This document shows, piece by piece, positions 44,801-64,000 of a stretch of DNA of 64,000 nt. A model generated the notes under the pieces. That model did no database searches. It was given only the letters and a program-made list of their open reading frames with translations, and had not been told where the DNA came from. This DNA is from Macrostomum lignano (Eukaryota). The number at the start of each line of letters is the position of its first letter. Position 1 is the first letter of the stretch. Made by a program: the position numbers and the translations under genes. The stretch covers positions 124,001 through 188,000 of the forward strand of contig NIVC01000751.1 of the NCBI GenBank assembly GCA_002269645.1, written 5' to 3'.

Positions 44801-45016
44801 GATTCTTCACCCCATCTGATCCTTCACCCCATCTGATCCTTCACCCCATCTGATCCTTCACCCCATCTGATCCTTCACCCCATCTGATCCTTCACCCCAT
44901 CTGATCCTTCACCCCATCTGATCCTTCACCCCATCTGATCCTTCACCCTATCTGATCCTTCACCCCATCTGATCCTTCACCCTACCTGATCCTTCACCCC
45001 ACCTGATCCTTCACCC
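44801..45016. repeat. 17-bp satellite CTGATCCTTCACCCCAT, array 1
   Basis: About 12-13 units, directly abutting LINE copy 1. Confidence 0.95.
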
Positions 45017-45507
45017 TTGAAGAATCACATTGGGTCTATATTCTGGTGGTGTGATTTTCATGCTGATACATACAATAAATGCGTGATCAAGAACTTCTAG
45101 ACTGCATGCACTGGACTAGACTGGACTTCTAGTAGAAGTCCTTGGGCGTGACTGCACGCACTTTATACTCTATTAAAGTAACCCCTTCCCGAGATTCCAG
45201 ACCCAGCAAATGCATTCGCGTTGTCATAATTAATACAATGCCATTGTCTTGTTCACTCGGTAAAAAACAGTCTATTTCAAATTAACAAAACACAATAAAG
45301 GTTCGAAGGGACCGCCTGCTGCTGCTAAAATTATGCATGACGGGACTGGCGCTTCTAAAAATAGGAGTTGCGACCGTTTAACTAGGAACTAAATTGTTTT
45401 TTCTTTTTAAATAAATCAGGAGTAATTAGGCGCAGAGCCAAAATTAATGCGAAGTTTCAGTAGGTTTATTTGCAACATCATTCTGCAGCTGCATTTTTTT
45501 AGAAAAA

Positions 45508-46065
45508 ATGGACAGCAAAGAAGCTCTAAAAACAGCATTGCTCAGGCTGTTCAGCGAGGCCACAAGCGGAAAGAGCTCCTTGGAGTTCGACGAGGGCCGC
45601 GGAATGCTCTCCAGCACAGCAAGCTGCAAGCGCATCTTAACTCACGCCAGAGGCCCCTATCTCACTTTGGCCGACACTCACGTGGACGGCGCTAACGAGA
45701 GGAACGCCGAGACAGGGACTTCGAGAGAATTTAGCATGATGAACTTCTTTCCGATGCTGAAGTCCCCAAGAAGAATGTTTGCTTCGCCAGTTTTTACCGC
45801 TTCGGTGTTCGACATCTGCTCTTTGGACTGTTTTAAGCGTAGGCCTATTATCAGAGAAAGAAACTACACCGCTAGCGAGCTGCAATCGGACATGCAGAAA
45901 GCAGACAAGGCGTGGAAGGAGCAGAAAAAGGCAACAGTTTCGGCGATGGAACAAGCCAAGCGGAAGAAGGCCGCAGACTGGCGCAGAGGAAGCCGGGAGC
46001 CGAAGGTCGGCCGAAATCAGCGGGTGCGACTGCACCGGGTGCAGCAACCGCGGAGGTCCAACTAA
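45508..46065 (+). pseudogene. GIMAP-derived intronless ORF, cassette 1 (185 aa, degenerate P-loop)
   Basis: Remnants SGKSSL, GRGMLSSTASCKRI and ARG..LTLADT align to exon 1 of the intact GIMAPs; ERNYTASEL resembles GRKYTSLEL in exon 2. Confidence 0.75.
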
Positions 46066-46434
46066 GACACCTGCTGGACTGGCCGACTGATTAAGCATCA
46101 CATTGCAATAATCGAAACATTGAAAACTCTCAAATTTGGCCTGTAGTTTTTTAATGTAATCCTTCTACATGCACTTATAGAAACCACTAGAAAGCTCGTA
46201 CTTGTACTACAGTTCCTTTTTTCTGGATTAAGGATCTAAATTCCTCTAAACCACAAGCAAAATTGCACGCTATAGTGATTTTGAATTTCGGTCATAAGTA
46301 CATTGTTTATATCATTGAAGCTGGAACACTTGGAAATAAAATTTTTGGAACTTCACTGGTTCATTGAATGATTGATGATTGAAATCACACTTGTGTTACA
46401 TGCGCATCTGAAAAAAGCTCTGCCAAATTTGTTT

Positions 46435-48159
46435 GATCTTCACCCCGTCTGATCCGTCACCCCATCTGATCCATCACCCCACCTGATTCCTCACCCCATC
46501 TGATTCCTCACCCCATCTGATCCGTCACCCCATCTGATCCGTCACCCCGTCTGATCCCTCACCCAATCATCTAATCCTTCACCCCATCTGACCCTTCACC
46601 CCATATGATCCTTCACCCCATCAGATCCTTCACCCCATCTGATCCTTCACCCCATTTGATCCTTCACCCCATTCGATCCTTCACCCCATCTGATCCTTCA
46701 CCCCATTTGATCCTTCACCCCATTTGATCCTTCACCCCATCTGATCCTTCACTCCATTTGATCCTTCACCCCATCTGATCCTTCACCCCATCTGATCCTA
46801 AAAACCTACCTGATCCTTCACCCCATCTGATCCTTCACCCCATCTGATCCTTCACCCCATCTGATCCTTCACCCCATCTGATCCTTCACCCCATTTGATC
46901 CTTCACCCCATTTGATCCTTCACCCCATCTGATCCTTCACCCCATCTGATCCTTCACCCCATCTGATCCTTCACCCCATCTGATCCTTCACCCCATCTGA
47001 TCCTTCACCCCATCTGATCCTTCACCCCATTTGATCCTTCACCCCATTCGATCCTTCACCCCATCTGATCCTTCACCCCATCTGATTCTTCACCCCATCA
47101 GATCCTTCACCCCATCTGATCCTTCACTCCATTTGATCCTTCACCCCATTCGATCCTTCACCCCATCTGATCCTTCACCCCATTTGATCCTTCACCCCAT
47201 CTGATCCTTCACCCCATCTGATCCTTCACCCCATCTGATCCTAAAAACCTACCTGATCCTTCACCCCATCTGATCCTTCACCCCATCTGATCCTTCACCC
47301 CATTTGATCCTTCACCCCATTTGATCCTTCACCCCATCTGATCCTTCACCCCATCTGATCCTTCACCCCATCTGATCCTTCACCCCATCTGATCCTTCAC
47401 CCCATCTGATCCTTCACCCCATCTGATTCTTCACCCCATCTGATCCTTCACTCCATTTGATCCTTCACCCCATCTGATCCTTCACTCCATTTGATCCTTC
47501 ACCCCATCTGATCCTTCACTCCATTTGATCCTTCACCCCATCTGATCCTTCACTCCATTTGATCCTTCACCCCATCTGATCCTTCACCCCATTTGATCCT
47601 TCACCCCATCTGATCCTTCACCCCATCTGATTCTTCACCCCATCTGATCCTTCACTCCATTTGATCCTTCACCCCATCTGATCCTTCACTCCATTTGATC
47701 CTTCACCCCATCTGATCCTTCACTCCATTTGATCCTTCACCCCATCTGATCCTTCACCCCATCTGATTCTTCACCCCATCTGATCCTTCACTCCATTTGA
47801 TCCTTCACCCCATCTGATCCTTCACTCCATTTGATCCTTCACCCCATCTGATCCTTCACTCCATTTGATCCTTCACCCCATCTGATCCTTCACTCCATTT
47901 GATCCTTCACCCCATCTGATCCTTCACTCCATTTGATCCTTCACCCCATCTGATCCTTCACCCCATTTGATCCTTCACCCCATCTGATCCTTCACTCCAT
48001 TTGATCCTTCACCCCATCTGATCCTTCACTCCATTTGATCCTTCACCCCATCTGATCCTTCACTCCATTTGATCCTTCACCCCATCTGATCCTTCACTCC
48101 ATTTGATCCTTCACCCCATCTGATCCTTCACCTCATCTGATCCTTCACCCCATCTGATC
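46435..48159. repeat. 17-bp satellite, array 2
   Basis: About 100 units, with 34-bp dimer variants. Confidence 0.95.
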
Positions 48160-48590
48160 ATTGAAGAATCACATTCGGTCCAGTTTTTGATGGTCTGATT
48201 TGGATGTTGATACATATGTACATTTAATTCGTGACTGCACGCACTTTATACTCTATTAAAGTAACCCCTTCCCGAGATTCCAGACCCAGCAAATGCATTC
48301 GCGTTGTCATAATTAATACAATGCCATTGTCTTGTTCACTCGGTAAAAAACAGTCTATTTCAAATTAACAAAACACAATAAAGGTTCGAAGGGACCGCCT
48401 GCTGCTGCTAAAATTATGCATGACGGGACTGGCGCTTCTAAAAATAGGAGTTGCGACCGTTTAACTAGGAACTAAATTGTTTTTTCTTTTTAAATAAATC
48501 AGGAGTAATTAGGCGCAGAGCCAAAATTAATGCGAAGTTTCAGTAGGTTTATTTGCAACATCATTCTGCAGCTGCATTTTTTTAGAAAAA

Positions 48591-49148
48591 ATGGACAGCA
48601 AAGAAGCTCTAAAAACAGCATTGCTCAGGCTGTTCAGCGAGGCCACAAGCGGAAAGAGCTCCTTGGAGTTCGACGAGGGCCGCGGAATGCTCTCCAGCAC
48701 AGCAAGCTGCAAGCGCATCTTAACTCACGCCAGAGGCCCCTATCTCACTTTGGCCGACACTCACGTGGACGGCGCTAACGAGAGGAACGCCGAGACAGGG
48801 ACTTCGAGAGAATTTAGCATGATGAACTTCTTTCCGATGCTGAAGTCCCCAAGAAGAATGTTTGCTTCGCCAGTTTTTACCGCTTCGGTGTTCGACATCT
48901 GCTCTTTGGACTGTTTTAAGCGTAGGCCTATTATCAGAGAAAGAAACTACACCGCTAGCGAGCTGCAATCGAACATGCAGAAAGCAGACAAGGCGTGGAA
49001 GGAGCAGAAAAAGGCAACAGTTTCGGCGATGGAACAAGCCAAGCGGAAGAAGGCCGCAGACTGGCGCAGAGGAAGTCGGGAGCCGAAGGTCGGCCGAAAC
49101 CAGCGAGTGCGAGTGCACCGGGTGCAGCAACCGCGGAGGTCCAACTAA
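48591..49148 (+). pseudogene. GIMAP-derived intronless ORF, cassette 2
   Basis: Near-identical to 45508-46065, offset 3083 bp. Confidence 0.75.
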
Positions 49149-49515
49149 GACACCTGCTGAACTGGCCGCCTGATTAAGCATCACATTGCAATAATCGAAA
49201 CATTGAAAACTCAAATTTGGCCTGTAGTTTTTTAATGTAATCCTTCTACATGCACTTATAGAAACCACTAGAAAGCTCGTACTTGTACTACAGTTCCTTT
49301 TTTCTGGATTAAGGATCTAAATTCCTCTAAACCACAAGCAAAATTGCACGCTATAGTGATTTTGAATTTCGGTCATAAGTACATTGTTTATATCATTGAA
49401 GCTGGAACACTTGGAAATAAAATTTTTGGAACTTCACTGGTTCATTGAATGATTGATGATTGAAATCACACTTGTGTTACATGCGCATCTGAAAAAAGCT
49501 CTGCCAAATTTGTTT

Positions 49516-50268
49516 GATCTTCACCCCGTCTGATCCGTCACCCCATCTGATCCATCACCCCACCTGATTCCTCACCCCATCTGATTCCTCACCCCATCTG
49601 ATCCGTCACCCCATCTGATCCGTCACCCCATCTGATCCTTCACCCCATCTGATCCTTCACCCCCATCTGATCCTTCACCCCATCTGATCCCTCACCCCCA
49701 TCTGATCCTTCACCCCATCTGATCCTTCACCCCCATCTGATCCTTCACCCCATCTGATCTTTCACCCCATCTATCCTTCACCCCATCTGATCCTTCACCC
49801 CATCTGATCCTTCACCCCATCTGATCCTTCACCCCATCTGATCCTTCACCCCATCTGATCCTTCACCCCATCTGATTCTTCACCCCATCTGATCCTTCAC
49901 TCCATTTGATCCTTCACCCCATCTGATCCTTCACTCCATTTGATCCTTCACCCCATCTGATCCTTCACTCCATTTGATCCTTCACCCCATCTGATCCTTC
50001 ACTCCATTTGATCCTTCACCCCATCTGATCCTTCACTCCATTTGATCCTTCACCCCATCTGATCCTTCACCCCATCTGATCCTTCACCCCATCTGATCCT
50101 TCACTCCATTTGATCCTTCACCCCATCTGATCCTTCACTCCATTTGATCCTTCACCCTATCTGATCCTTCACTCCATTTGATCCTTCACCCCATCTGATC
50201 CTTCACTCCATTTGATCCTTCACCCCATCTGATCCTTCACCTCATCTGATCCTTCACCCCATCTGATC
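49516..50268. repeat. 17-bp satellite, array 3
   Basis: About 44 units. Confidence 0.95.
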
Positions 50269-50699
50269 ATTGAAGAATCACATTCGGTCCAGTTTTTGAT
50301 GGTCTGATTTGGATGTTGATACATATGTACATTTAATTCGTATCTGCACGCACTTTATACTCTATTAAAGTAACCCCTTCCCGAGATTCCAGACCCAGCA
50401 AATGCATTCGCGTTGTCATAATTAATACAATGCCATTGTCTTGTTCACTCGGTAAAAAACAGTCTATTTCAAATTAACAAAACACAATAAAGGTTCGAAG
50501 GGACCGCCTGCTGCTGCTAAAATTATGCATGACGGGACTGGCGCTTCTAAAAATAGGAGTTGCGACCGTTTAACTAGGAACTAAATTGTTTTTTCTTTTT
50601 AAATAAATCAGGAGTAATTAGGCGCAGAGCCAAAATTAATGCGAAGTTTCAGTAGGTTTATTTGCAACATCATTCTGCAGCTGCATTTTTTTAGAAAAA

Positions 50700-51257
50700 A
50701 TGGACAGCAAAGAAGCTCTAAAAACAGCATTGCTCAGGCTGTTCAGCGAGGCCACAAGCGGAAAGAGCTCCTTGGAGTTCGACGAGGGCCGCGGAATGCT
50801 CTCCAGCACAGCAAGCTGCAAGCGCATCTTAACTCACGCCAGAGGCCCCTATCTCACTTTGGCCGACACTCACGTGGACGGCGCTAACGAGAGGAACGCC
50901 GAGACAGGGACTTCGAGAGAATTTAGCATGATGAACTTCTTTCCGATGCTGAAGTCCCCAAGAAGAATGTTTGCTTCGCCAGTTTTTACCGCTTCGGTGT
51001 TCGACATCTGCTCTTTGGACTGTTTTAAGCGTAGGCCTATTATCAGAGAAAGAAACTACACCGCTAGCGAGCTGCAATCGGACATGCAGAAAGCAGACAA
51101 GGCGTGGAAGGAGCAGAAAAAGGCAACAGTTTCGGCGATGGAACAAGCCAAGCGGAAGAAGGCCGCAGACTGGCGCAGAGGAAGCCGGGAGCCGAAGGTC
51201 GGCCGAAACCAGCGAGTGCGAGTGCACCGGGTGCAGCAACCGCGGAGGTCCAACTAA
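50700..51257 (+). pseudogene. GIMAP-derived intronless ORF, cassette 3
   Basis: Near-identical to cassette 2, offset 2109 bp. Confidence 0.75.
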
Positions 51258-51629
51258 GACACCTGCCGGACTGGCCGACTGATCAAGCATCACATTGCAA
51301 CAATCGAAACATTGAAAACTCTCAAATTTGGCCTGTAGTTTTTTAATGTAACCTTTCTACATGCACTTATAGAAACCACTAGAAAGCTCGTATTTGTACT
51401 ACAGTTCAAATTTTCTGGATTCAGGATCTAAATTCCTCTAAACAACATGCAAAATTGCCCGCTATAGTGATTTTGAATATCAGGCATAAGTACATTGTTT
51501 ATATAATTGACGCTGGAACACTTGGTAATTATAAATTTTTTGGAACTACATTGCTTCATTGAATGATTGATAATTTCAATCACACTTGTGTTACATAACA
51601 TATCTGAAAAGGGGGCTTCCAAGTTGTTC

Positions 51630-51948
51630 GATACTTCACCCCTGATCCTTCATCCCATCATCTGATCCTTCACCCCATCTGATCCTTCACCCCCATCTGA
51701 TCCTTCACCCCATCATCTGGTCCTTCACCCCATCTGATCCTTCACCCCATCATCTGATCCTTTACCCCATCTGATCCTTCACCCCTTCATCTGATCCTTC
51801 ATTCCATCTGATCCTTCACCCCATCATCTGATCCTTCACCCCATCTGATCCTTCACCCCATCTGATCCTTCACCCCTTCATCTGATCCTTCACCCCATCT
51901 GATCCTTCACCCCATCTGATCCTTCACCCTATCTGATCCTTCACCCCA
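51630..51948. repeat. 17-bp satellite, array 4
   Basis: About 18 units, several with a 3-nt insertion. Confidence 0.9.

Positions 51949-52422: not shown

Positions 52423-52425
<3 letters not shown>

Positions 52426-52498
<73 letters not shown>
52426..52498. repeat. (GA)n microsatellite
   Basis: About 36 units. Confidence 0.98.
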
Positions 52499-52501
<3 letters not shown>

Positions 52502-53455
52502 GCTGAAGAGATGTTAGCCACGCAATCGCTGCTGACGAGTGCGCTGGCTGGGAGCTGTGCTGCAACCGTTTGTTTGGATTGCGTTTGCAGCGAATCTGCT
52601 TAAAGATTGGAGTTTTTGTGATTTAAAGTAAGCCTCATTAATTTATGTTTTTATTTCTTTAATAGATAAAAACTCCAATAGTTCTTTCTTTTCTGACCAT
52701 CGTTCCATCTACGAGTAGCATAACAAATCGAGCTGGCTGTGACCAAAGAGGAAAGAATTCTGTCCTCCATGGGGGCAGCCCCCACCCCCCCCCCCCCCCC
52801 AAGGGGGCTTCGCGCTCCCTTGACCCCACTTTCTTCTGAAATTTGCCATAGACATTTTCAGCGGGCCGTAAAACCGTCTGAATAAATTGGAGAAAATGGG
52901 ATTTTACCATAGACAGTCTCAGCGGGCCGCTAACTATAACACTAATATATGGATGGGGCGCATCGGTCAGAAACGAGCTAACACTCCTCGGCGCTACGCA
53001 ACTCGGCGTCATAGCTCGTTTCTGCATTCTGCAGCCCATCAATATTGGTATATTGCACAGACCATAAATCAAACCAAAAAAATACAAGAACGAATTAAGT
53101 GCATCGATGAGCAATAAAAGAAAAGCACAGAGGTTGATGTGGCTGCAAGAACGGTTTTTAAACGGGACACTTACAAGCGTATATATATGCGAAGGCAGAA
53201 TATATATTAGAAGTGCTTATTCAAGTTGTTTTCTGCTACATTTATATTAATAGAAAATGGTTTGACAGAATCGAATTAACAGTAAAAATGACGCTTTCAT
53301 CCATTTTCGATCGGCTGTTCGAAGAAAGCTCCAATGCAATGCTATCGGACAATTCGTGTAGCTAGCTCGTATATTATATCGTATTAGTATTTTAGATATT
53401 ATACCATAAAATAATAATAGCGCATTCATAATATTCGAACGGAAACGAAAAACAC

Positions 53456-55866
53456 TCAGCTGCTAGGCTTGCCGTTGTTTTGATTCATAGATGCTAAAAA
53501 TTGTAGGCAGCTTTGCTGCCAGCTGTTCGCGAAAAGCCTTTCTTGAGCGTCATATTGTTGTTGAGGAGGTTGCGCTGGACCCGCTGAGCCATGGGACTGA
53601 GCAACCGGCGGGGCAGTTGCTCCTGCTTGAGAACTTTTGAAAAAAAATTCACGACGAGCCCCAGTGAGTTGCGGAGGAGGTGGCGGTGCAGGCCTTGCTG
53701 AGCCACGGGACTTTGCAACATGGGCAGTTGCTCTTGCCTGAGAACTTTTGGCTTGTTTTGGTGCATTGCCGGTGGCATTGGAGCCCGAAAACGCGTTGTA
53801 CACACCCGGAATACTCGTCACTTTTGAAACAATGTCGATCACTTTAACCGTAGTACCTAGCCAATCCACGCTCTGTTGTTGCTCTTGCTTTACCTCAGCG
53901 GTCACCTGCTCCCTAATACGCCTCTCAAATTCCAACTTCTCTTGTCTCCTCTTTGCTTCTGCTTCCTCTGCTTTCTTCCGCTCTGCCTCTTCCGCATTTC
54001 TCTGCTCCACAGAGGTGTACTTTTTGCCTCCGTTGCTGGCGACCAGACTGTCAGCCTTGGACAGCAGAGCTTCGATCTGCCTGTCCTGAACAGCTGTGTC
54101 GCACCGTCTGCCATTGTCCACCAGGGCGAACCGATTGCCGCATTTGGTGAGCAGCTGGTCCAGGTAGGGGATCTTCTTCCTGTATTTCAAATGAAAAAGT
54201 TACAGAGACCATGTGATGCTGATGTTTTTACTTTACATAGTAATTAATAATAACAATCGATCACACCTGCACCAATGGGCAGATGAGCAACCGACAGCTC
54301 AGCTGCAGCTATAGCGCGGGCCATCTGAAGGCTGCGTACGGCTGTTCAGTCCAAGGACTGGGGGGTCGCCACACACACACTCAATTACCCCAGCTAATGC
54401 TGGCACCCATTTTACAGCTGGGTGAACTGAAGCAATGCAGAGTTAAGTGTCTTGCTCAAGGACATAAATTGTTCCGGTGAGGGTCGAGAAAGGAACCCCC
54501 GACCTTCAAGTCGTGACTCTAACCACAAACCACAACCACTAAACACTAAACACTAACCACTAACCACTAACCACTAACCACTAACCACTAACCACTAACC
54601 ACTAATCACTAACACTAACCACTAACCACTAACCACTAACCACTAACCACTAACCACTAACCACTAACCACTAACCACTAACCACTAACCACTAGGTTAC
54701 AAAACAACCCCCGCCCTAGGCTACAACTCCCTTTTTACCTACGTTCGTACAATATGCTCTTACTAGCGTGATTTAGAAAAGTCGCATTAGATCTTTAAAA
54801 TAAAATCAGATCTTGGAACATTAGCAATCAGTAGAAAATGAAATTCGGAAGATGCTAGCCAAAGTTGCAACCAGAACAATGTACGCGAAAATTCAAGGTT
54901 TAAATCGATCACGCTCTACGTAACGCAGGATAAACATTATAACGCAGTCATATCAAACCTTAGAGACTAAAGAGAGTCACTGAGGATTTTTGACTTTTCA
55001 AAAAACCATGGAAGACATACGAAGCATAGGAAAGGTTGGTTGAAAAGTTCGCGGCCTAACATACAGTAGAAGCAGTTATCTTACCTACGTTATATCACAG
55101 TCAGTATATATTAAGAGTTCATAAATATAACTTAAAGGACATACAAAGGTCATGTATAACTGTCAGAACTGTCATAGAAAAATTGCTTTAAACTGTAATA
55201 ATAAACCAAACCATAGAAATTTACACAGTCGTGTAGACAGCTGACTTTCTCGGGCCATCTAGAACTCTGAATACAACCATCAATGCTACCAAACCAGCTG
55301 ATTACATATATTTACAAGCACAAACGGCAAGATCAAGGTCAGGCTCAGACCTGATGAGAAACACAAAATACTCCAACTGATAACACTTTTCAGAGACGTT
55401 AGGTAGAAAAATACTGAAGAAACTTTTACCTGATCTCCTGCAGCTCATTGCGAAACTCGGTCTCGTCGTTGTCAAACTCGTCTCCATGGCTGAACACAAC
55501 GATGGCGTGCTTGTAGAACTGATCGCCGAACATCTCGGCGACCACCTCGATGGCCCGTCTCTCCTCGGCAGTGAACCGAGCGTCGCACTTCACCACCACC
55601 AGGAAGCCGTCGAATCCGTTTGGACAGAACTCCATGGCCCTTCGGATCTCGGTCTTGGCCTTCTCCTCGTCTGCAACGTCCATGGTTCCGGGAGTGTCGA
55701 CCACAGTGAGGTCGCGACCTCTGGCGCGAGTTGAGATGCACATGCAGCTTGCCGTGCTGGACAGCATTCCGCGGCCCACCTGGAATCTTGTGGTGTTGAG
55801 CAAGGCGTTCGCCAATGAGCTCTTTCCATTGCCGGTCTTGCTGACCAGAAGCAATGCAGTTGTCAT
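53456..55866 (-). CDS. GIMAP/AIG1-family GTPase 2 (2 exons, about 386 aa; start uncertain)
   Basis: Exons 55866-55430 and 54179-53456, phase-2 intron. SKTGNGKSS, DTPG, RFTAEE, KCGNRFALVDN. The frame stays open upstream to an acceptor near 55945, so a short extra 5' exon is possible. Confidence 0.88.
54241..54716 (-). mobile_element. tRNA-derived CORE-type SINE with expanded A-box, in the GIMAP2 intron
   Basis: Minus strand reads CCTAGTGGTTAG..., GGTCGGGGGTTCC (B-box-like), CCTTGAGCAAGACACTTAACTC...CAGTTCACCCAGCTGTAAAATGGG (MIR/CORE-like), then a (TTA)-rich tail. Confidence 0.75.
54519..54694. repeat. (TAACCAC)n heptamer array, about 24 units
   Basis: Directly visible; lies inside the SINE head. 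Confidence 0.95.
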
Positions 55867-56116
55867 TTTTAAAAAAATCTTTTCTGGCATTAAATCCTTT
55901 AGTATATAGCCTTTACTGCTTGTTAATGGCTCCGTTCTCCCCGACTGCAAGACTTATAGTCTTGGCCCCAATATTTTTGTTCCTAGTAAAACGCTCGATC
56001 TCTACTGTCCTATTTTTGTCGCTGCCGTCAACTGTTTATGCTGTTTTTGTAGGGTCGATATAAGTAGCTTACCTGTCAAAACTTGTTTACCTCACTCTTG
56101 TTGAGTTCGGTTACTC

Positions 56117-56242
56117 ACTCAGACTGAAGTTCCGTCTAGTTCTAGTGCTTACCGAATGTACATGGACTACTGTACCATAGCCAGACCGCTCAAAAAAAGT
56201 GCGGTAAACACTGGAGCTGGAAGATGGAACTTCAGTCTGAGT
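56117..56242. promoter_or_regulatory. Imperfect palindrome between the divergent GIMAP2 and GIMAP3 genes
   Basis: ACTCAGACTGAAGTTCCGTCT...CTTACCG pairs with CGGTAAAC...AGATGGAACTTCAGTCTGAGT; a regulatory role is inferred from position only. Confidence 0.4.
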
Positions 56243-56470
56243 ATGAACTACGAGCCTTGCAATTTCTTAAAATAGCTTGCATCTCTTGGGTGGGGTAGAG
56301 AGTTAACCACAGAAAATACTCAATTTTTTAACTAGTCATGCGTTCGAACCTCATTATAAAAAACAGTTTTCCTTTCTGTTATTGCACTGCCGCGCGTATA
56401 CTACAACACAAAACGATTGTCAGACTACTTCTGTGTAATAAGCGTTTGCTGAGTAGTTTATACAAAAGAA

Positions 56471-57697
56471 ATGTTGACCCAAGCTAGATTTGCTAACACC
56501 CGAGGGACGGCATTGCTTCTCGTCAGCAAGACCGGAAGCGGAAAGAGCTCGTTGGCGAACGCCTTGCTGAAAACAACTCAGTTCCAGGTGGGCCGCGGCA
56601 TGCTGTCCTGTACCGAAAGCTGCAAGCGCATTTCAACTCGCGCCAGAGGTCGCGACCTCACTGTGGTCGACACTCCCGGAACCATGGACGTTGCAGACGA
56701 GGAGAAGGCCAAGACCGAGATTCGGAGAGCCATTGGCTTCTGTCCGGAAGGATTCGACGTCTTCCTGGTGGTGCTGAAGTGCGACGCTCAGTTTACGGCT
56801 GAGGAGAGACGGGCCATCGAGGTGGTCGCTGAGATGTTCGGCGACGAGTTCTACAAGCACGCCATCGTTGTGTTCAGCCACGGAGACGAGTACAAGAACA
56901 ACGAGTTCGAGTTTTCGAGAGACCTACAAAGCATAAGGTAACTATAATGTAATGTACATGTACTCGTAATTGAATCGCGCTAAAAGCAGAAAGGACGGAT
57001 TCGACGAAGCTTCAGTCCAGTTTGCTGTAGAATGTACATGTACATGTACAGACACAACTTGCATTAGCGCAATGATGGAATCACGCGATACTAAAGCTTT
57101 TTGCAGTTGTGTGTATATGTATTTTTTATATTTGATATCTTATTTTAGTACATGTACTTTTGTAAGTTCTGAAGATCATGCGCTATAGACAATAAAGAGA
57201 TCATTGTACAGTCTTACTGGTGCATTAGGTATCAATTAATAGTTGGCTTTTAATTACTGGCTGGCTATTTGTACCCAAAACGCAGGAAGCAGATCCCATA
57301 CCTGGACCAGCTGCTTACCAGATGCGGCAATCGATTCGCCCTGGTGGACAATGGCAGACGGTGCGACAGAGCTGTTCAGGACAGGCAGATCGAAGCTCTG
57401 CTGTCCAAGGTTGAGAATCTGGTCGTCAGTAGTCGAGGCAGAATGTACACCACTGTGGAGCTGGAGGCGGCGCGGAGGAGGGCGGAGGAGGCGGAGAGAA
57501 AGAGGAAGAGAGAAGAAAATGACAGGAAGGAACGGGAGAGACTGGAGTTGGAAAAGCGCGTGAGAGAAGATGTGATGCAACATCAACAAAGAGATACAAG
57601 CACGTTAGAAACAGCAATCGACGGAATATCGTTAGTTGTCAACGTGGCTTTTGAAGTGCATCGATTGTACAACTTTTTTAGTCCCTTATTTCGTTAG
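56471..57697 (+). CDS. GIMAP/AIG1-family GTPase 3 (2 exons, 292 aa)
   Basis: Exons 56471-56937 and 57286-57697, phase-2 intron at the same position as in the paralogs; same G1, G3 and conserved-box motifs. Confidence 0.9.
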
Positions 57698-58509
57698 GCA
57701 AAACTAAAAGATCATTCAAGCATTGCGTTATGATTTTATCAGTTGTATGCAGATACATGTACAAGTATTGTACTGTACCGCGAGCCGCGACGTACGGGTG
57801 TACATTATACATACATGCAACCCTTGACTAAGTGGACTGTAGATGTATTCTGTTCAGTTGATGTACAATTACTCCCCTTTCCAAATTCCATTTTCTATTT
57901 GCATGTACTTTGCTGTATTTTTGGAAGCATTAATTACAATTGTCATGTACATGTAACATTTGGTAATATAGCTCATCTCTATTCCCTGTGCATGAACTCA
58001 GCATAAATTTAATCTCTTGTAGGATAGCTAATAATTATTTAATAATTATTAGTAATAATAGCAATGATAGTTAATAATTAGTTGTCATTGTTTATAAAAT
58101 AGTTTCTGGCATTCTGATTTAATCTATAACATAGAGTTTGCTACTTGTTACTGGCTCTTTCTACGAGCGTACCTCACTATTGGACTTAGGGTCCAGACAC
58201 AAGATTTTTGTTCCTGGTACGTGTAAAACGGTCGCGCAACGTCCTATTATTGTCGATTCCATCAGCTGTTTACCTTAAGTACCGTTGTAATATTCCTTTT
58301 TGCGGCCTAGTTGGTACTGCAAGCTTTCAATTTAATCATAGATACGGAAATCAGGCTTGCGAGACTGAAAATTTTCTGTCTATGGTCGACGCTCGTTGGC
58401 ATAGCGAAGTTCAATTTAATCCTGGGGGCATCAATTTAATCATTCTATGTTTTCAAAGCACAGTGTATTTTTACTGTCATCGTAACTTGTCTTTAACTGG
58501 CTTGATTTA

Positions 58510-59232
58510 ATGAGTAATCCGGACGAGCTACTTGAAGAGGATTACAGTGAGTGGATTTTTGAAACTGCAAATACCGACATCGACCAGGCAAATGACGGCA
58601 TCGATCAGGCAAATGACGACATCGACCAGCCAGCCCAAGTACACCGCGGGCAGTACAACAAGATTAGCGATGAGAAATACGGTCTGATTGTCACCGCTTT
58701 AGAGCGCGGCGATAGTTCGATGAAAATTTCTCAGTGGCTACAAGCGAATGTTCGTACTGTTTACTCGATTCGAAGGCGGTACGAACTCACTGGTCGCCGG
58801 AACCGACTAAGTCGAGGAGGTGCTCGTCAAGTGAAACTTACTGACGCTCATGTGCAGCACCTGCTGGAATGGATCGAAGAAAACCCCCAGCTAACTTTGC
58901 GAGAAATGAAGCTTAAGCTTCGTATGTGAGTCAACTGTAAGCCGAATGTTGGACAAGCAGCTCATCACTCTAAAATGCCTTAGCCGAGATGCCGACATTC
59001 CAATCGCAAGAAATTCTGCAGAGAATCGAATTTCGCGGCAAGAGTTTGCTCAGTGGTTGACTGGATTTGTCCCCTGAGGTTCACTTGATTTTCATTGAAG
59101 AGACAGGTTTTAACATCTGGACACGTCGGACGCAAGGTCGCAGCATAAGGGGCAAGAAGGCTAAACGCAAAGTTCACACGCAACGTGGAGTGCAGGTGAA
59201 CATCGTGCAAGCAATTACACCTAATCTCGGCC
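58510..59232 (+). mobile_element. Tc1/IS630-like transposase remnant
   Basis: HTH region, RGGAR.VKLT, EENPQLTLREM, STVSRML, then LIFIEETGFN (first Asp reads Glu); two frameshifts; truncated before the rest of the DDE motif; no TIR identified. Confidence 0.8.
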
Positions 59233-59276
59233 TGGTACATCCAGATTCCAGACGTTCATCAATGATCTGGTGCAGT

Positions 59277-60666
59277 GATGAAGCTGCCGTGTGGATAACG
59301 CCTCATCCAGGCGTCCGACAGCCCCAGGATGGCTGTGAAGCCAGTGCCGTCGGTGCGTTTAAGGGTGTCATGCACCACTAGGCTCGCGGCGGGAAGCTCC
59401 CGGTTGACTGCTAGCAGTCCTTTCCGGAGCTCGTCAGCAGAGGTAACGACGCTCCTGGCCGGAACCCAGATTCGATGCCTCTTGGTCCGGGGGCGCTCGT
59501 CCTCCCTGCAGAAGGCTAGGTTGGGGTCCCAGCTCTGCTCGGGCAGCAGCTCAAGGAGCCGCCGACCCGAGTAAGCATCACTGGACCAAATGAGAAGGCA
59601 CGAGTCCCTCTTCGCATTCGAATGAATGTTCAGAGGCGTGCCCTTCAGAGTTTGCTTCCACAGGAGGCCATCAACGGCGCTTCTCACCTGCTTCAGCTGG
59701 TCGGGAGACAGGCGCGCGTCCTTCCCCAGAATGACAACCGCCGGTTGCCTCTTTGGCGCATCAGCGTAGGAGGCCCGGGGGTCAGTGGAGCATTCTTCAG
59801 GTGGGCTGTCCACCCTCCCGGCTGCATCGGCCTCCCTATCCTGGGCAGGGACTTCAGTGGGCTCGAGGCCCTCTTTTGCCACCGCCCCAGATTGGGAAGC
59901 TTCCGCTGCCGCGGGCCGTTGGCCCCTGGCGCTGGTTAGGCTTCCGCCCTCCTTGGCCCGCCTCGCCTTGTTAAGTCGACGGCGGGCAGCTCCAGAGGTG
60001 GTGCTCAGCTGCTTGGCAGCTGGAGTAGCAGGTGTCTTCTCGGAGGCACCGCTCAGAGTTGGCTCCACGGGTCTCGCCGAGGCGTCCCCGATGGTAGCAG
60101 GTGGTATGGCCGCGGAGTCCACGGCCCCCGCTGAGGCCGGAGGCACTGTGTCATCCACAGCCGGTTGGGTACTTCGGTTAGAAGCCATTGGCTGGAAGTA
60201 AAAAATGGGACTTCCTGCAGAACACAGGCAAAGAACCGCAAGGCCGCAACCCCAAACCAAGCGGCAGGCCCCCAAAAAGCAAAATACCACCCTGCGAGGG
60301 GACCCAAAAGCGCAAGGGGAACCGTTAGCGACCAGACTACTCCCTGGCCAAGCGTCCATCAGCACGGAGTTACACTGGGACATTAGAGGGTGCGTTTATA
60401 CGGTCACACCAGGACCCGGCGCCAACGAATCAGCTCGGCAAGGCCCAAATGGGCCTGCTTTAACACCCACGGGACGAGTACCTTTCAAAGTGCGCCTTGC
60501 AAGGTGAAAATCAGGAGACAGAGTCTCTTGAGCTATCAGCCTGCCAGAGGAGGCAGGTATGAGCATCGCTGGCTGGGATAAAGGCCATCCCAGTCTCATA
60601 CTGCACAGATAGTTCACCACGCCATTGCGTGCAGGATCCGGGGTTCTGGGGGCAAACAGCCACGGC
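59277..60666 (-). mobile_element. Second copy of the same LINE (5' UTR plus partial ORF1)
   Basis: Colinear with about 43400-44800; ORF1 ATG at 60188 is open through the segment frameshifted in copy 1; homology ends near 59277. Confidence 0.9.
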
Positions 60667-61575
60667 GATTCTTCACCCCATCTGATTCTTCACCCCATCT
60701 GATCCTTCACCCCATCTGATCCTTCACCCCATCTGATCCTTCACCCCATCTGATCCTTCACCCCACCTGATTCTTCACCCCACCTGATCCTTCACCCCAT
60801 CTGATCCTTCACCCCATCTGATTCTTCACCCCACCTGATCCTTCACCCCATCTGATTCCTCACCCCATCTGATCCTTCACCCCATCTGATTCTTCACCCC
60901 ATCTGATTCTTCAACCCATCTGATCCTTCACCCCATCTGATTCTTCACCCCATCTGATCCTTCACCCCATCTGATCCTTCACCCCATTTTATCCTTCACC
61001 CCATCTGATCCTTCACCCCATCTGATCCTTCACCCCATCTGATCCTTCACCCCATCTGATCCTTCACCCCATCTGATCCTTCACCCCATCTGATCCTTCA
61101 CCCCATCTGATTCTTCACCCCATCTGATCTTTAACCCCATTTGATCCTTCACCCCATCTGATCCTTCACCCCCATCTGATTCTTCACCCCACCTGATCCT
61201 TCACCCCACCTGATCCTTCACCCCACCTGATCATTCACCCCATCTGACCCTTCACCCCACCTGATCCTTCACCCCATCTGATTCTTCACCCCACCTGATC
61301 CTTCACCCCACCTGATCCTTCACCCCACCTGATCCTTCACCTCATCTGACCCTTCACCTCATCTGACCCTTCACCCCATCTGATCCTTTACCCCATCTGA
61401 TCCTTCACCCCACCTGATCCTTCACCCCATCTGATCCTTCACCCCATCTGATCCTTCACCCCATCTGATCCTTCACCCCATCTGATCCTTCACCCCATCT
61501 GATCCTTCACCCCATCTGATCCTTCACACCATCATCTGATCCTTCACTCCATCTGATCCTTCACCCCATCTGATC
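60667..61575. repeat. 17-bp satellite, array 5
   Basis: About 53 units, directly abutting LINE copy 2. Confidence 0.95.
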
Positions 61576-62014
61576 ATTGAAGAATCACATTCGGTCCAGT
61601 TTTTGATGGTCTGATTTGGATGTTGATACATATGTACATTTAATTCGTATCTGCACGCACTTTATACTCTATTAAAGTAACCCCTTCCCGAGATTCCAGA
61701 CCCAGCAAATGCATTCGCGTTGTCATAATTAATACAATTCCATTGTCTCGTTCACTCGGTAAAAAACAGTCTATTTCAAATTATCAAAACACAATAAGCT
61801 TGCAAGTGACCGCCTGCTGCAGCTAAAATTATGCATGACAGGACTGGCGCTTCTAAAAATAGGAGTTGCGACCGTTTAACTAGGAACTAAATGGTTTTTT
61901 CTTTTTAAATAAATACAGAGTCTTTAGGTACAGAGCCAAAATTGCTGCGTGCAGTTTTTTGTAGGTTATTTTTCGTCTGATATTATTCTGTAGCTGGAAA
62001 CTTTAAAGAAAGAT

Positions 62015-62524
62015 ATGGAAAGCGCTAGAGTGGTTCTGATTAGCAAGACCGGAAGCGGAAAGAGCTCGTTGGCGAACGCCCTGTTCAACACCACGGAGTT
62101 CCACGTGGGCCGCGACATGCTGTCCAGCACTTCAAGCTGCAAAAGCATCTTATCTCGCCTCGCTGGGGCCGACACTCCCGGAACCATGGACGTTGCAGCA
62201 GACGAGGAGAAGGCCAAGACCGAGAACCGTAGAGCCATGGAGCTTTGTATGAGAGCGTGTCGAGTTTGTCTTGTGCTAGTGGATTCCCATTGCGACGCTC
62301 AGTCCAAGGAAAGAAATTACACTGCAAGGGAGCTGCAATCGGACATGCAACGAACAGAAAAAGCAAGCAAGGAGGAGAAAAAGGTAACAAAGGCGATGCA
62401 GATTACGGAACAAGCCAAGCGGAAGAAGGCCGCAGACTGGCGCAGAGGAAGCCGGGAGCCGAAGGTCGGCCGAAACCAGCGAGTGCGAGTGCACCGGGTG
62501 CAGCAACCGCGGAGGTCCAACTAA
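62015..62524 (+). pseudogene. GIMAP-derived intronless ORF, cassette 4 (169 aa, P-loop and DTPG retained)
   Basis: VLISKTGSGKSSLANALFNT and DTPGTMDV are intact; the sequence jumps from HCDAQ to ERNYT, losing G4 and the intron; C-terminus as in cassettes 1-3. Confidence 0.8.
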
Positions 62525-62893
62525 GACACCTGCCGGACTGGCCGCCTGATCAAGCATCACATTGCAACAATCGAAACATTGAAAACTCTCAAATTTGGCC
62601 TGTAGTTTTTTAATGTAACCTTTCTACATGCACTTATAGAAACCACTAGAAAGCTCGTATTTGTACTACAGTTCCCTTTTTCTGGATTAAGGATCTAAAT
62701 TCCTCTAAACCACATGCAAAATTGCCCGCTATAGTTATTTTGAATTTCGGGCAGAAGTACATTGTTTATATCATTGAAGCTGGAACACTTGGAAATAAAA
62801 TTTTTGGAACTTCACTGGTTCATTGAATGATTGATGATTGAAATCACACTTGTGTTACATGCGCATCTGAAAAAGGCTCTGCCAAATTTGTTT

Positions 62894-63524
62894 GATCTTC
62901 ACCCCGTCTGATCCGTCACCCCATCTGATCCATCACCCACCTGATTCCTCACCCCATCTGATTCCTCACCCCATCTGATCCGTCACCCCATCTGATCCGT
63001 CACCCCATCTGATCCATCACCCCACCTGATTCCTCACCCCATCTGATTCCTCACCCCATCTGATCCGTCACCCCATCTGATCCGTCACCCCATCTGATCC
63101 GTCACCCCATCTGATCCATCACCCCACCTGATTCCTCACCCCATCTGATTCCTCACCCCATCTGATCTGTCACCCCATCTGATCCATCACCCCACCTGAT
63201 TCCTCACCCCATCTGATTCCTCACCCCATCTGATCTGTCACCCCATCTGATCCATCACCCCACCTGATTCCTCACCCCATCTGATCCCTCACCCCATCTG
63301 ATTCCTCACCCCATCTGATCCCTCACCCCATCTGATTCCTCACCCCATCTGATCCCTCACCCCATCTGATTCCTCACCCCATCTGATCCCTCACCCCATC
63401 TGATTCCTCACCCCATCTGATCCCTCACCCCATCTGATTCCTCACCCCATCTGATCCCTCACCCCATCTGATCCCTCACCCCATCTGATTCCTCACCCCA
63501 TCTGATCCTTCAGCCCATCTGATC
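62894..63524. repeat. 17-bp satellite, array 6
   Basis: About 37 units, mostly GATTCCTC/GATCCCTC variants. Confidence 0.95.
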
Positions 63525-64000
63525 ATGCACCTTTATCATTCAATGTAGATAATTACATTCGGTCCGAATTCTGATTTTGTGATTTTATTTTGATACATCC
63601 TATACTTTATGCGTAGGAAACCTAGTCTAACCCAGATTCCAGACTCTAAGGTAGCTCGTGCATTTGCGTTGTATCAAGAATTAGTACAGTTTAATTGTAT
63701 TTCGGTCACTCGGTAAAGAACTGTCTATGTTAATTATAATTAACGAAACACAATACGATTCGAAGGGACCAGCTGCTGCTATTATAAAATTATGCATGAC
63801 GGGACTGGCGCTTCTAAAAATATTACTGAGTAACTGCTGAATTTTGGCTGTGTGCTTAAAATTGGCGCTATATACGAGCGTACAAAGGAGCGTACATACT
63901 AGCGTACAAAGGAGCGTACATACGAGCGTACAGACAAAAATTCGTTCCTAGTTAAATAGCCGCAAATGGGAAATACTTCATAATGAGAAATACTTGCGAC

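What the first reader, a model, noticed from the sequence alone, without database searches (positions are those of the whole stretch)
44801..63965. Satellite-bracketed GIMAP cassette that amplifies as a unit
Seen: a roughly 1.35-kb block (upstream region, GIMAP-derived ORF, 3' flank) occurs at 45017, 48160, 50269 and 61576, and a diverged fifth starts at 63525. The four complete blocks sit between arrays of one 17-bp satellite. Arrays at 46435, 49516 and 62894 open with the same ordered variant units. Flanks are mosaic: cassettes 3 and 4 share proximal 3' variants, while cassette 4 matches cassettes 1/2 distally. Established: GIMAP/AIG1 GTPases are immunity-associated and expand by lineage, and tandem arrays promote unequal exchange. 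Inference: the satellite acts as a recombination scaffold that multiplies and shuffles a GIMAP-derived module, a possible copy-number diversification system beside the intact genes.
Basis: partly seen in the sequence, partly recalled or inferred. Interest (0 to 1): 0.75.

Follow-up and report, generated by a model that had tools for sequence, protein, structure and literature searches.

The report
Tandemly amplified GIMAP gene fragment, flatworm
In a flatworm (Macrostomum lignano) immune-type GTPase gene cluster, a decayed gene fragment and its neighbouring 17-bp repeat array were copied in tandem by ordinary unequal recombination, so copy number differs between the genome's duplicated copies, with no sign of a purpose-built diversification system.

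Summary
Six arrays of one 17-bp minisatellite lie between 44801 and 63524. They bracket four ~1.35-kb cassettes. The array-opening unit order is shared and the flanks are mosaic, as described.

The window is Macrostomum lignano (Mlig_3_7, contig NIVC01000751.1). The "fifth cassette" is the promoter region of an intact GIMAP gene (D) that starts just past the window.

Each cassette is a truncated GIMAP copy. It keeps the promoter and about 100 N-terminal codons, fused to a diverged C-terminal helix region. The G4/G5 motifs are missing.

Other contigs of the same assembly carry the locus with 2 cassettes or 1, against 4 here. The single cassette is a C1/C4 hybrid, as a recombination deletion would leave.

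Cassettes 1-3 are 100% identical across the core. Identity between the two cassette types is U-shaped: 94-100% near the arrays and 44-60% in the centre. dN/dS is about 0.6 with no codon-position bias.

Best reading: birth-and-death of a tandem gene family by unequal crossing-over and gene conversion, using both arrays and cassettes as homology. This genome is already known for about 15% tandem repeats and for large indels between subgenomes. Amplification homogenises the copies rather than diversifying them. Interest is modest.

The parts
39934..41359 (-). GIMAP gene A, intact-looking, two exons (exon 1 40877-41359, exon 2 39934-40446)
   Evidence: Pfam AIG1 E=1.2e-30. Exon 1 is 97% identical to gene D of the sister locus, in inverted orientation.
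41762..44800 (-). LINE-like fragment 1: ORF1-like region plus endonuclease domain, no reverse transcriptase and no poly(A) at its 3' boundary
   Evidence: Exo_endo_phos_2 E=5e-18. It is 95% identical to the second copy at 59276-60666. It is absent from contig NIVC01001267.
44801..45016 (+). 17-bp array S1, 12.7 copies
   Evidence: unit map
45017..46433 (+). Cassette 1 (type I core). ORF 45508-46065, 185 aa. Its 5' 130 bp are of the 'a' type shared with the L002 cassette.
46434..48159 (+). 17-bp array S2, 101 copies. It opens K-H-I-C-E-E, and a 34-bp dimer variant dominates its end.
48160..49514 (+). Cassette 2 (type I core). ORF 48591-49148.
49515..50268 (+). 17-bp array S3, 44 copies. Same opening and same ending as S2, with a shorter interior.
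50269..51641 (+). Cassette 3 (type I core). ORF 50700-51257. It has its own diverged distal 3' flank.
51642..51948 (+). 17-bp array S4, degenerate, with 37/54-bp higher-order structure
53456..55950 (-). GIMAP gene B (exon 1 55426-55950, exon 2 53456-54190). The intron holds (CTAACCA)25.
   Evidence: AIG1 E=1.7e-29 and 1.8e-7
56471..57697 (+). GIMAP gene C (exon 1 56471-56941, exon 2 57269-57697), head-to-head with gene B
   Evidence: AIG1 E=3.6e-31 and 8e-7; inverted repeat I1
58510..59275 (+). Truncated Tc1/mariner-like transposase fragment
   Evidence: HTH_32 and HTH_29 hits. My own reading of a DDE-like stretch in ORF 59067-59381.
59276..60666 (-). LINE-like fragment 2: 374-aa ORF1-like ORF plus 5' UTR. 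Same junction with the 17-bp array as fragment 1.
60667..61575 (+). 17-bp array S5, 53 copies
61576..62892 (+). Cassette 4 (type II core). ORF 62015-62524, 169 aa. It retains the P-loop GSGKS and the DTPG motif.
   Evidence: AIG1 E=3.3e-8 covering profile positions 2-108 of 212. 55% identity to gene D over 106 aa. GIMAP4 3LXX E=1.7e-5.
62893..63524 (+). 17-bp array S6, 37 copies
63525..64000 (+). Upstream (promoter) region of intact GIMAP gene D. The gene body lies at window-equivalent 64068-65612, outside the window.

Best explanation
**What it is.** This is a GIMAP (AIG1-type GTPase) gene cluster of the flatworm Macrostomum lignano that is evolving by birth-and-death.

**Inferred history.**
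- An ancestral unit of [17-bp array - promoter - GIMAP gene] was duplicated in tandem.
- One copy lost the middle of the gene: G4, G5, the conserved box and the intron. It became a ~1.35-kb 'cassette' flanked by the same array on both sides. That bracketing is an automatic by-product of duplicating a unit that includes the array.
- The cassette lineage split long ago into two core types, I and II.

**Later events.** Direct repeats, both the arrays and the cassettes, have served as homology for unequal crossing-over and gene conversion.
- (i) The type I cassette with its array was recently amplified to three copies on this haplotype.
- (ii) The cassette edges next to the arrays were homogenised, while the centres stayed diverged.
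- (iii) A sister haplotype lost about 16.7 kb by recombination between cassette 1 and cassette 4, leaving one hybrid cassette.
- (iv) The arrays themselves expanded and contracted.

**Function.** The cassette ORFs lie in transcript-derived gene models, yet they evolve like decaying or weakly constrained fragments. The amplification changes dosage and structure, not sequence diversity.

**Shown versus inferred.**
- Shown: the anatomy, the mosaicism, the copy-number differences between assembled versions, the hybrid cassette and the loss of motifs.
- Inferred: the order of events, and whether crossovers started in the arrays.
For: - **Source.** Exact-protein look-ups place the window in GCA_002269645.1, contig NIVC01000751.1. 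Papers citing that accession identify it as M. lignano.
- **Unit-wise duplication.** 45147-47189 matches 48230-50268 at 97%, and 47407-49819 matches 49515-51948 at 95%. S2 and S3 share both their opening and their closing unit order.
- **Cassette origin.** The cassette upstream region is 75-77% identical to the region upstream of gene D, and the array/upstream junction is homologous. The N-terminal ~100 codons are GIMAP. The tail starts at the conserved C-terminal 'xxYTxxEL' motif. The tail also gives weak collinear DNA matches to exon 2, z = 3.5-4.9 for genes A, B and D.
- **Copy-number differences between contigs.**
  - NIVC01001778 (L002): gene A - LINE1 - array - one cassette - array - gene D.
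  - NIVC01001267 (M3): gene A - 3 array units - one type I cassette - S4 - genes B/C - LINE2 - S5 - type II cassette - S6 - gene D.
  - The window: four cassettes.
- **Hybrid cassette.** The L002 cassette is C1-like up to alignment column ~135 and C4-like from column ~230.
- **Order of events.** The LINE1/LINE2 duplication (4.3% divergence) appears older than the window/L002 split (2.5%). L002 therefore most likely lost the interval.
- **Recent amplification.** C1 = C2 = C3 at 100% over columns 201-900, while the M3 type I cassette differs there by 4-12%.
- **U-shaped identity.** Type I versus type II identity is 94-100% at the edges and 44-60% in the centre. In the core each type is closer to the intact genes (0.22-0.36) than to the other type (0.385).
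- **Array dynamics.** S6 has 30, 36 or 52 units in different versions, one of them with an internal duplication.
- **Genome context.** Tandem repeats make up about 15% of the genome (PMC5730564). Homeologs differ by 32-36% once long indels are counted (PMC10733133). Other sampled loci hold arrays every 1-2 kb.
Against: - **Breakpoints cannot be assigned to the arrays.** In a tandem structure the unit boundary is arbitrary, and the one clear hybrid junction lies inside a cassette.
- **The contig may be chimeric.** From ~53.3 kb to 69.7 kb it has no substitutions relative to contig NIVC01001267, which ends there. PMC10733133 reports 36% of the assembly length in scaffolds that are chimeric between subgenomes. 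The join to the right of cassette 3 could therefore be an assembly switch, and four versions of the right arm exceed the three-subgenome model.
- **No raw reads could be examined.** The three-copy tandem rests on one PacBio/Canu contig.
- **Limited sampling of the genome.** The 17-mer could be searched in only about 190 kb of M. lignano sequence.
- **The ORFs are suspiciously well preserved.** Both cassette types keep an ORF from ATG to the same stop, despite about 40% core divergence and several indels. That is more than simple decay predicts.
Confidence: 0.72

Rival explanations
1. Assembly artefact. The three tandem type I cassettes, or their link to the B/C region, come from Canu stacking or joining reads of different subgenomes or haplotypes in a very repetitive neopolyploid genome.
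For: - Contig NIVC01001267 is substitution-free against the window from 53.3 to 69.7 kb and ends there. The only dense differences lie inside cassette 3.
- Contig NIVC01001266 ends inside an S5-like array.
- PMC10733133 reports 36% of the assembly length in chimeric scaffolds.
- There are four right-arm contig versions (two of them substitution-free duplicates of each other) against three subgenomes.
Against: - C1, C2 and C3 are not interchangeable. C1 has a different 5' segment. C1 and C2 share a 3' flank found in no other contig. C3 has its own 3' flank.
- S2 has 101 units and S3 has 44.
- There are no Ns in the window.
- The 7-kb block is within PacBio read length, and coverage was 130x (PMC5730564).
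- A chimeric join to the right of cassette 3 would not remove the C1-S2-C2-S3-C3 tandem.
Confidence: 0.13
2. Functional module. The cassettes encode expressed 'mini-GIMAP' proteins (P-loop half-domain plus a charged helix), for example decoys or regulators of the intact GIMAPs. Array-mediated copy-number change would then be selected as a dosage or diversification device.
For: - Both types keep an ORF from ATG to a shared stop, in all six cassette versions compared.
- All indels between the types are in frame in the protein-guided alignment.
- About 450 bp of promoter-homologous sequence is retained.
- The ORFs are GenBank gene models. That annotation derives from RNA-seq-guided transcripts and excludes repeat-overlapping and non-coding ones (PMC5730564).
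- Copy number differs between haplotypes.
Against: - dN/dS is 0.58-0.73 in the better-sampled cassette comparisons, against about 0.3 for most intact-gene pairs. The type I within-type comparison is not different from neutral (p=0.23), with differences at codon positions 1/2/3 of 5/10/8.
- G4/G5 are absent in both types. Type I also has a damaged P-loop and no DxxG motif, and gets no Pfam hit.
- The amplified copies are identical, so no diversity is generated.
- No paper mentions these gene IDs, and no paper in the library pairs GIMAP with flatworm biology.
Confidence: 0.1
3. Mobile-element origin. The 17-bp array is the 5' tandem-repeat region of the LINE-like element, or part of another transposon that captured a GIMAP fragment, and the copies arose by transposition.
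For: - Both LINE-like fragments abut the array at the same junction (…GGCGATTCTT|CACCCC).
- A related LINE ORF1 contig carries ~105-bp tandem monomers in its 5' region.
- A Tc1-like fragment lies in the locus.
Against: - All arrays and cassettes are head-to-tail in one orientation at one locus and its homeologs only. Four other M. lignano AIG1 loci (about 88 kb) and the window outside the reported 44.8-63.5 kb interval hold none in the listed matches.
- S2, S3, S4 and S6 have no LINE next to them.
- LINE fragment 1 lacks a reverse transcriptase and a poly(A) end, so it is itself a segmental piece.
- No tRNA or Rfam feature was found.
Confidence: 0.05

Closest known systems
Birth-and-death evolution and concerted evolution of tandem immune-gene clusters by unequal crossing-over or NAHR and gene conversion (for example vertebrate GIMAP clusters, plant NLR clusters). 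From general knowledge.
   Same: - Direct-repeat gene copies.
- Truncated pseudogene-like members sitting beside intact genes.
- A hybrid copy at a deletion junction.
- Patchwork identity between copies.
- Copy-number differences between haplotypes.
   Different: - The amplified member is a promoter-plus-fragment chimera, not a whole gene.
- A 17-bp minisatellite makes up 35-55% of each repeat unit and supplies part of the homology.
- The comparison here is between subgenomes or haplotypes of a neopolyploid flatworm.
Gene-containing macrosatellites (human D4Z4/DUX4, RS447/USP17, CT47 arrays). From general knowledge.
   Same: - A kb-scale head-to-tail unit (3.1 and 2.1 kb start-to-start).
- Each unit carries an ORF with its own upstream region.
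- Copy number is variable.
- Copies within an array are homogenised.
   Different: - Only three copies.
- The units are unequal in length, because the internal minisatellite varies.
- The ORF is a degraded GTPase fragment with no evidence of function.
Minisatellite instability as mapped by variant-repeat order (Jeffreys-type MVR maps). From general knowledge.
   Same: - Arrays share conserved ends with variable interiors.
- Internal block duplications occur (52 against 30-36 units in S6).
- Higher-order dimers are present.
   Different: There are no germline mutation-rate or hotspot data here, and the arrays are compared between paralogous positions as well as between alleles.
Human GIMAP7, GIMAP2 and GIMAP4 GTPases (PDB 3ZJC, 2XTM, 3LXX)
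   Same: - Gene D matches GIMAP7 at E=7e-24 over residues 5-250.
- The type II cassette matches the first ~85 residues of the GIMAP4 G domain, at E=1.7e-5.
   Different: The cassettes lack the second half of the G domain (G4, G5, conserved box) and the hydrophobic C-terminal segment present in gene D.

Membership tests
GIMAP/AIG1 GTPase (cassette ORFs) | AIG1 domain match above the Pfam gathering score, over the whole domain | tested here: not met
   Type II scores 33.6 bits against a cut-off of 27, but covers only profile positions 2-108 of 212. Type I gets no hit at E<=0.01.
GIMAP/AIG1 GTPase (cassette ORFs) | G1 P-loop and G3 DxxG motifs | tested here: inconclusive
   Type II keeps SKTGSGKS and DTPG. 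Type I has SEATSGKS and DTHV (DTPV in the M3 copy).
GIMAP/AIG1 GTPase (cassette ORFs) | G4/G5 guanine-specificity motifs and the conserved box | tested here: not met
   The alignment to genes A-D shows the region from ~residue 100 to ~200 deleted in both types.
GIMAP/AIG1 GTPase (genes A-D) | Full AIG1 domain and similarity to solved GIMAP structures | tested here: met
   AIG1 E=1e-29 to 4e-31 for exon 1, plus exon 2 hits. GIMAP7 3ZJC at E=7e-24 over residues 5-250 of gene D.
NAHR / unequal crossing-over rearrangement | Directly oriented homologous repeats flanking the gained or lost interval, with a hybrid repeat at the junction of the shorter haplotype | tested here: met
   The L002 single cassette is C1-type at its 5' end (96.9% over columns 1-130) and C4-type afterwards (95-100%). 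The ~16.7 kb between C1 and C4 is absent there.
NAHR / unequal crossing-over rearrangement | Observed de novo events or reciprocal products in pedigrees or populations | not testable with these tools
   Only one assembly of one inbred line is available.
Gene-containing macrosatellite | Head-to-tail units of at least 1 kb, each with the same ORF | tested here: met
   Start-to-start spacing is about 3.1 kb and 2.1 kb. Three 185-aa ORFs differ by at most 2 residues.
Gene-containing macrosatellite | Copy-number polymorphism | tested here: inconclusive
   Type I copies number 3, 1 and 0 on contigs 751, 1267 and 1778. These are homeologs or haplotypes within one assembly, not individuals, and assembly error is not excluded.
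Transposable element carrying a satellite and a captured gene fragment | Dispersed copies at non-homologous sites with terminal repeats or target-site duplications | tested here: not met
   The 17-mer and cassette occur only at this locus and its homeologous contigs, within the ~190 kb sampled. The cassettes are bounded directly by arrays.
Programmed cassette-based diversification system | A set of sequence-diverse donor cassettes feeding an expressed gene | tested here: not met
   The amplified cassettes are 100% identical in promoter and core. No conversion tract from the cassettes into genes A-D was seen: core distances to the genes are 0.22-0.36.

The most novel reading that the evidence does not exclude
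The cassettes are expressed 'mini-GIMAP' genes (half a G domain plus a charged helix, with their own promoter). Their dosage would be tuned by minisatellite-mediated unequal exchange, so that the M. lignano subgenomes carry different doses of a GIMAP regulator or decoy. More broadly, the ubiquitous locus-specific minisatellites of this genome would be the main substrate for the very large indel divergence between its subgenomes.
Probability: 0.1. Interest if true: 0.55.

Novelty: new member of a known kind. Interest (0 to 1): 0.28.

Why it matters
**As it stands.** This is a well-resolved example of a tandem immune-type gene family decaying, amplifying and homogenising in a repeat-rich neopolyploid genome. 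Four assembled versions of one locus capture an amplification, a recombination deletion with its hybrid junction, a gene-conversion-like patch and array length changes.

**Practical uses.**
- It flags a place where the Mlig_3_7 assembly may be chimeric or redundant.
- It shows that several annotated 'genes' (BOX15_Mlig029569, BOX15_Mlig001629) are truncated GIMAP derivatives.
- It documents an uncharacterised GIMAP cluster in a flatworm.

**What it does not show.** It reveals no new mechanism. If the mini-GIMAP ORFs proved functional, or the minisatellites proved to drive subgenome divergence genome-wide, it would matter more.

Tried and rejected
- **LINE ORF1 (374 aa) protein search, to ask whether the array belongs to the element.** It returned only two short Logan contigs and one UniRef protein. 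The related contig L004 shares the 5' UTR but stops before the junction, so the test is inconclusive.
- **BLASTN of the cassette tail and 3' flank against the extended locus.** It matched nothing but the other cassettes. Only Smith-Waterman against shuffles and protein motifs gave weak evidence that the tail derives from GIMAP exon 2.
- **Rfam and tRNA scans of 39-64 kb.** Nothing was found.
- **Search for the cassette ORF family.** Only two 90% clusters turned up, all M. lignano. There are no Logan contigs for the cassette ORFs, nor for the two intact-gene proteins looked up (P0027, and P0007). Transcript evidence therefore rests on the annotation pipeline alone.
- **Literature search for the gene IDs and for GIMAP in flatworms.** Nothing relevant was found.
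- **Positive selection or diversification.** Rejected on dN/dS and on the identity of the amplified copies.
- **Retrocopy origin of the cassette.** This cannot be tested because the intron lies inside the deleted interval. The retained promoter homology argues for DNA-level duplication.
- **Polishing artefact as the cause of the C3 core being identical to C1/C2.** Considered unlikely by reasoning alone. It was not tested.
- **Not attempted.** A genome-wide 17-mer census and read-depth or long-read checks are not possible with these tools. Structure prediction would not discriminate between the hypotheses.

Full report
**1.

TRF finds one 17-bp unit (GATCCTTCACCCCATCT) in six arrays: 44801-45016 (S1), 46434-48159 (S2), 49515-50268 (S3), 51642-51948 (S4), 60667-61575 (S5) and 62899-63524 (S6). 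A 16-mer of the unit matches 246 times at up to 2 mismatches, against 0.07 expected. All listed matches are on the + strand at 44.8 kb onward.

Between the arrays lie four ~1.35-kb blocks: C1 45017-46433, C2 48160-49514, C3 50269-51641 and C4 61576-62892. They align end to end.

I recoded each array as a string of variant units. S2, S3 and S6 open with the same order, K-H-I-C-E-E in the lettering, with S6 differing at one unit. S2 and S3 also close with the same order.

The mosaic flanks are real:
- In the proximal 3' flank C3 and C4 are 99.3% identical.
- In the distal 3' flank C4 is 96.9% identical to C1/C2.
- In that distal flank C3 is only 84% identical to every other cassette.

**2. Source and context**

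The 185-aa cassette ORF is an annotated protein of GCA_002269645.1, contig NIVC01000751.1. Papers citing that accession identify it as the Mlig_3_7 assembly of the flatworm Macrostomum lignano.

The fetched locus L001 overlaps the window exactly and extends it by 8.5 kb. Histone H2A, H2B and a dynein light-chain gene follow.

Gene D is a bona fide GIMAP. Pfam AIG1 is recorded on the annotated product, and human GIMAP7 (3ZJC) matches at E=7e-24 over residues 5-250.

The window holds three more intact-looking paralogs:
- A: 39934-41359, minus strand.
- B: 53456-55950, minus strand.
- C: 56471-57697, plus strand.

It also holds two fragments of a LINE-like element (41762-44800 and 59276-60666, minus strand) and a truncated Tc1-like transposase.

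Minisatellites are the rule in this genome:
- 25% of the window is tandem repeat, and 35% of its first 32 kb.
- Four unrelated M. lignano loci hold a different array every 1-2 kb.
- The genome paper reports about 15% simple and tandem repeats (PMC5730564).

**3. What a cassette is**

From 5' to 3' a cassette contains:
- About 450-490 bp homologous to the region upstream of gene D, at 75-77% identity. The array/upstream junction is included.
- About 100 codons of the GIMAP N-terminus.
- About 70 further codons, then about 370 bp of 3' flank.

There are two core types.
- Type II (C4): 169-aa ORF. It keeps the P-loop SKTGSGKS and DTPG, and matches AIG1 over profile positions 2-108 of 212.
- Type I (C1-C3): 185-aa ORF. 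It has SEATSGKS and DTHV, lacks eight residues after the P-loop, and gets no Pfam hit.

Both types lack G4, G5 and the conserved box.

The tail begins at the conserved C-terminal motif: cassette ERNYTAREL, gene D RKYTSLEL, human GIMAP4 EGCYTNRMY. It also gives weak, collinear DNA matches to exon 2 of genes A, B and D, at z = 3.5-4.9 against shuffles.

I therefore read the cassette as an internally deleted GIMAP copy. Plain BLASTN does not see the tail homology, so this step is probable, not proven.

**4. Related versions of the locus**

Cluster members led to three further contigs of the same assembly.

| Contig | Structure |
|---|---|
| Window (NIVC01000751) | A - LINE1 - S1 - C1 - S2 - C2 - S3 - C3 - S4 - [B, C, Tc1] - LINE2 - S5 - C4 - S6 - D |
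| L002 (NIVC01001778) | A - LINE1 - S1 - one cassette - S6 - D - histones; 97.4% identical to the window in the A-LINE1 arm |
| M3 (NIVC01001267; L009 and L011 merged) | A - three array units - one type I cassette - S4 - B/C - LINE2 - S5 - type II cassette - S6 - D; no LINE1, S1, C1, S2 or C2 |
| L010 (end of NIVC01001266) | Starts inside an S5-like array, then type II cassette - S6 (52 units) - D |

Cassette number is therefore 4, 1 and 2 in the three complete versions.

The single L002 cassette is a hybrid. Its first ~135 alignment columns are of the C1 type, including a 61-bp segment found only in C1. From about column 230 it is of the C4 type. That is the product expected from recombination between C1 and C4 with loss of the ~16.7 kb between them.

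LINE1 and LINE2 differ by 4.3%, while window-LINE1 and L002-LINE1 differ by 2.5%. Assuming a roughly constant rate, the LINE duplication predates the split. L002 therefore most likely lost the interval.

**5. Recent amplification and homogenisation**

C1+S2 matches C2+S3 at 97% over 2 kb. The end of S2 plus C2 and the start of S3 matches S3 plus C3 and S4 at 95% over 2.4 kb. The array and cassette were therefore copied together.

Over alignment columns 201-900 (promoter and core) C1, C2 and C3 are 100% identical. The type I cassette of M3 differs from them there by 4-12%.

To the right of ~51.2 kb the window and M3 differ by four substitutions up to 53.3 kb. From there to 69.7 kb there are none, only 1-2-bp indels of the kind sequencing leaves. 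So either C3's core was recently overwritten by a C1/C2-type sequence, or the contig switches haplotype there.

Between types I and II, identity is U-shaped:
- 100% and 93-97% in the first 400 columns.
- 44-81% in the core.
- 94-100% in the last 480 columns.

In the 78 shared GIMAP codons, each type is closer to the intact genes (p-distance 0.22-0.36) than to the other type (0.385). The simplest reading is an old split of the cores, with later homogenisation entering from the array sides.

The arrays also change by block duplication and deletion. S6 has 30, 36 or 52 units, and S3 looks like S2 with its interior removed.

**6. Function**

Nei-Gojobori dN/dS values:

| Comparison | dN/dS |
|---|---|
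| Type I vs type II | 0.62 |
| C4 vs L002 cassette | 0.58 |
| C3 vs M3 type I cassette | 0.64 |
| Most intact-gene pairs | 0.31-0.35 |
| Gene A vs gene D (97% identical, few changes) | 0.54 |

The C3 versus M3 comparison is not different from neutral (p=0.23). Its 23 differences fall at codon positions 1, 2 and 3 in the ratio 5:10:8.

Against pure junk:
- Every version keeps an ORF from ATG to the same stop.
- The ORFs are GenBank gene models (BOX15_Mlig029569, BOX15_Mlig001629). That annotation derives from RNA-seq-guided transcripts and excludes non-coding and repeat-overlapping ones (PMC5730564).

I found no publication on these genes, and none on GIMAPs in flatworms. I conclude the cassettes are probably transcribed, truncated derivatives under little or no coding constraint.

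Their amplification yields identical copies, so it is not a diversification device.

**7. Mechanism and rivals**

*Best explanation (0.72).* Birth-and-death of a tandem GIMAP family, with unequal crossing-over and gene conversion using both arrays and cassettes as direct-repeat homology. The 'bracketing' follows automatically from duplicating a unit that begins with an upstream array.

*Assembly artefact or chimera (0.13).* PMC10733133 reports three subgenomes (S, L1, L2), SNP divergence of 1.9-2.4%, and 36% of the assembly length in chimeric scaffolds. Here there are four right-arm versions. However, C1, C2 and C3 each have distinguishing flanks and arrays, so a simple stacking error is unlikely.

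*Functional mini-GIMAP dosage module (0.10).* See section 6.

*Transposon origin of the array (0.05).*
- For: both LINE fragments meet the array at the same junction, and a related LINE has 5' tandem monomers.
- Against: LINE1 has no reverse transcriptase and no poly(A) end, most arrays have no LINE beside them, and the 17-mer is absent from the other ~88 kb of M. lignano AIG1 loci sampled.

**8. Comparison and verdict**

The structure works like NAHR-driven tandem gene clusters, and like an incipient gene-containing macrosatellite with three units of 2.1-3.1 kb.
- Genes A-D pass the GIMAP membership tests.
- The cassette ORFs fail them: half a domain, no G4/G5.
- Programmed diversification and mobile-element models fail their defining tests.

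The finding is a new member of a known kind. It is a tidy case study, and a useful flag on assembly and annotation, but it would not surprise a specialist in this genome, where large indels between homeologs are already documented.

The decisive checks could not be run here: long reads spanning the block, a genome-wide census of the 17-mer, and type-specific expression.

Noticed in passing
window 21943-32094, minus strand: By my reading of the ORF translations (no domain search was run), these are exons of a THOC2-like gene. They are separated by introns that each hold a different minisatellite array (units of 14-31 bp, 0.3-1.1 kb long). 35% of window 1-32 kb is tandem repeat.
   Followed up: partly
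window 29315-31437; L005 14243-15116; window 60659-60667: Minisatellites with a shared GGCGATTCT core occur in the presumed THOC2 introns and, with a different 26-bp unit, at an unrelated M. lignano locus. The same 9-mer forms the junction between the LINE-like fragment and the 17-bp array. This may be a dispersed minisatellite family from which the 17-bp unit arose.
   Followed up: partly
L006/L007 10001-12080; L008 10001-13293: M. lignano encodes 499-509-aa proteins that combine an AIG1 GTPase domain with a Hint (hedgehog/intein-type) domain (P0012, P0013). I know of no description of this architecture.
   Followed up: no
window 53301-64000 and L001 to window-equivalent 69728, against contig NIVC01001267 positions 1 to ~16400: The two contigs of Mlig_3_7 are substitution-free over 16.4 kb, differing only by 1-2-bp indels, and contig 1267 ends there. 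This is either redundant assembly of one locus or two identical-by-descent haplotypes, and there may be a chimeric join near 51.2 kb.
   Followed up: partly
window 50846-50974 (cassette 3 ORF codons ~50-92) against M3 cassette: Substitutions between the two type I versions form a dense patch: 12% over 100 bp, with 15 of 43 residues changed. There is no codon-position bias, and the cause is unknown.
   Followed up: partly
window 40877-41359 (minus strand) and window-equivalent 64143-64578 (plus strand): Exon 1 of genes A and D forms an inverted pair with only ~5% nucleotide difference, while B and C differ from them by 12-17%. This suggests gene conversion between the inverted outer genes of the cluster.
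   Followed up: no
window 54519-54694: There is a (CTAACCA)25 heptamer array in the intron of GIMAP gene B. It is conserved in contig 1267.
   Followed up: no
L003 1-190: A Logan contig encodes a related LINE ORF1 (71% identity). Its 5' region contains two ~105-bp tandem monomers.
   Followed up: no
window 4262-5638 and 8103-9155, minus strand: Two ORFs that look by eye like C2H2 zinc-finger proteins, with long low-complexity (Q/P/A-rich) stretches. Minisatellite arrays lie between them.
   Followed up: no
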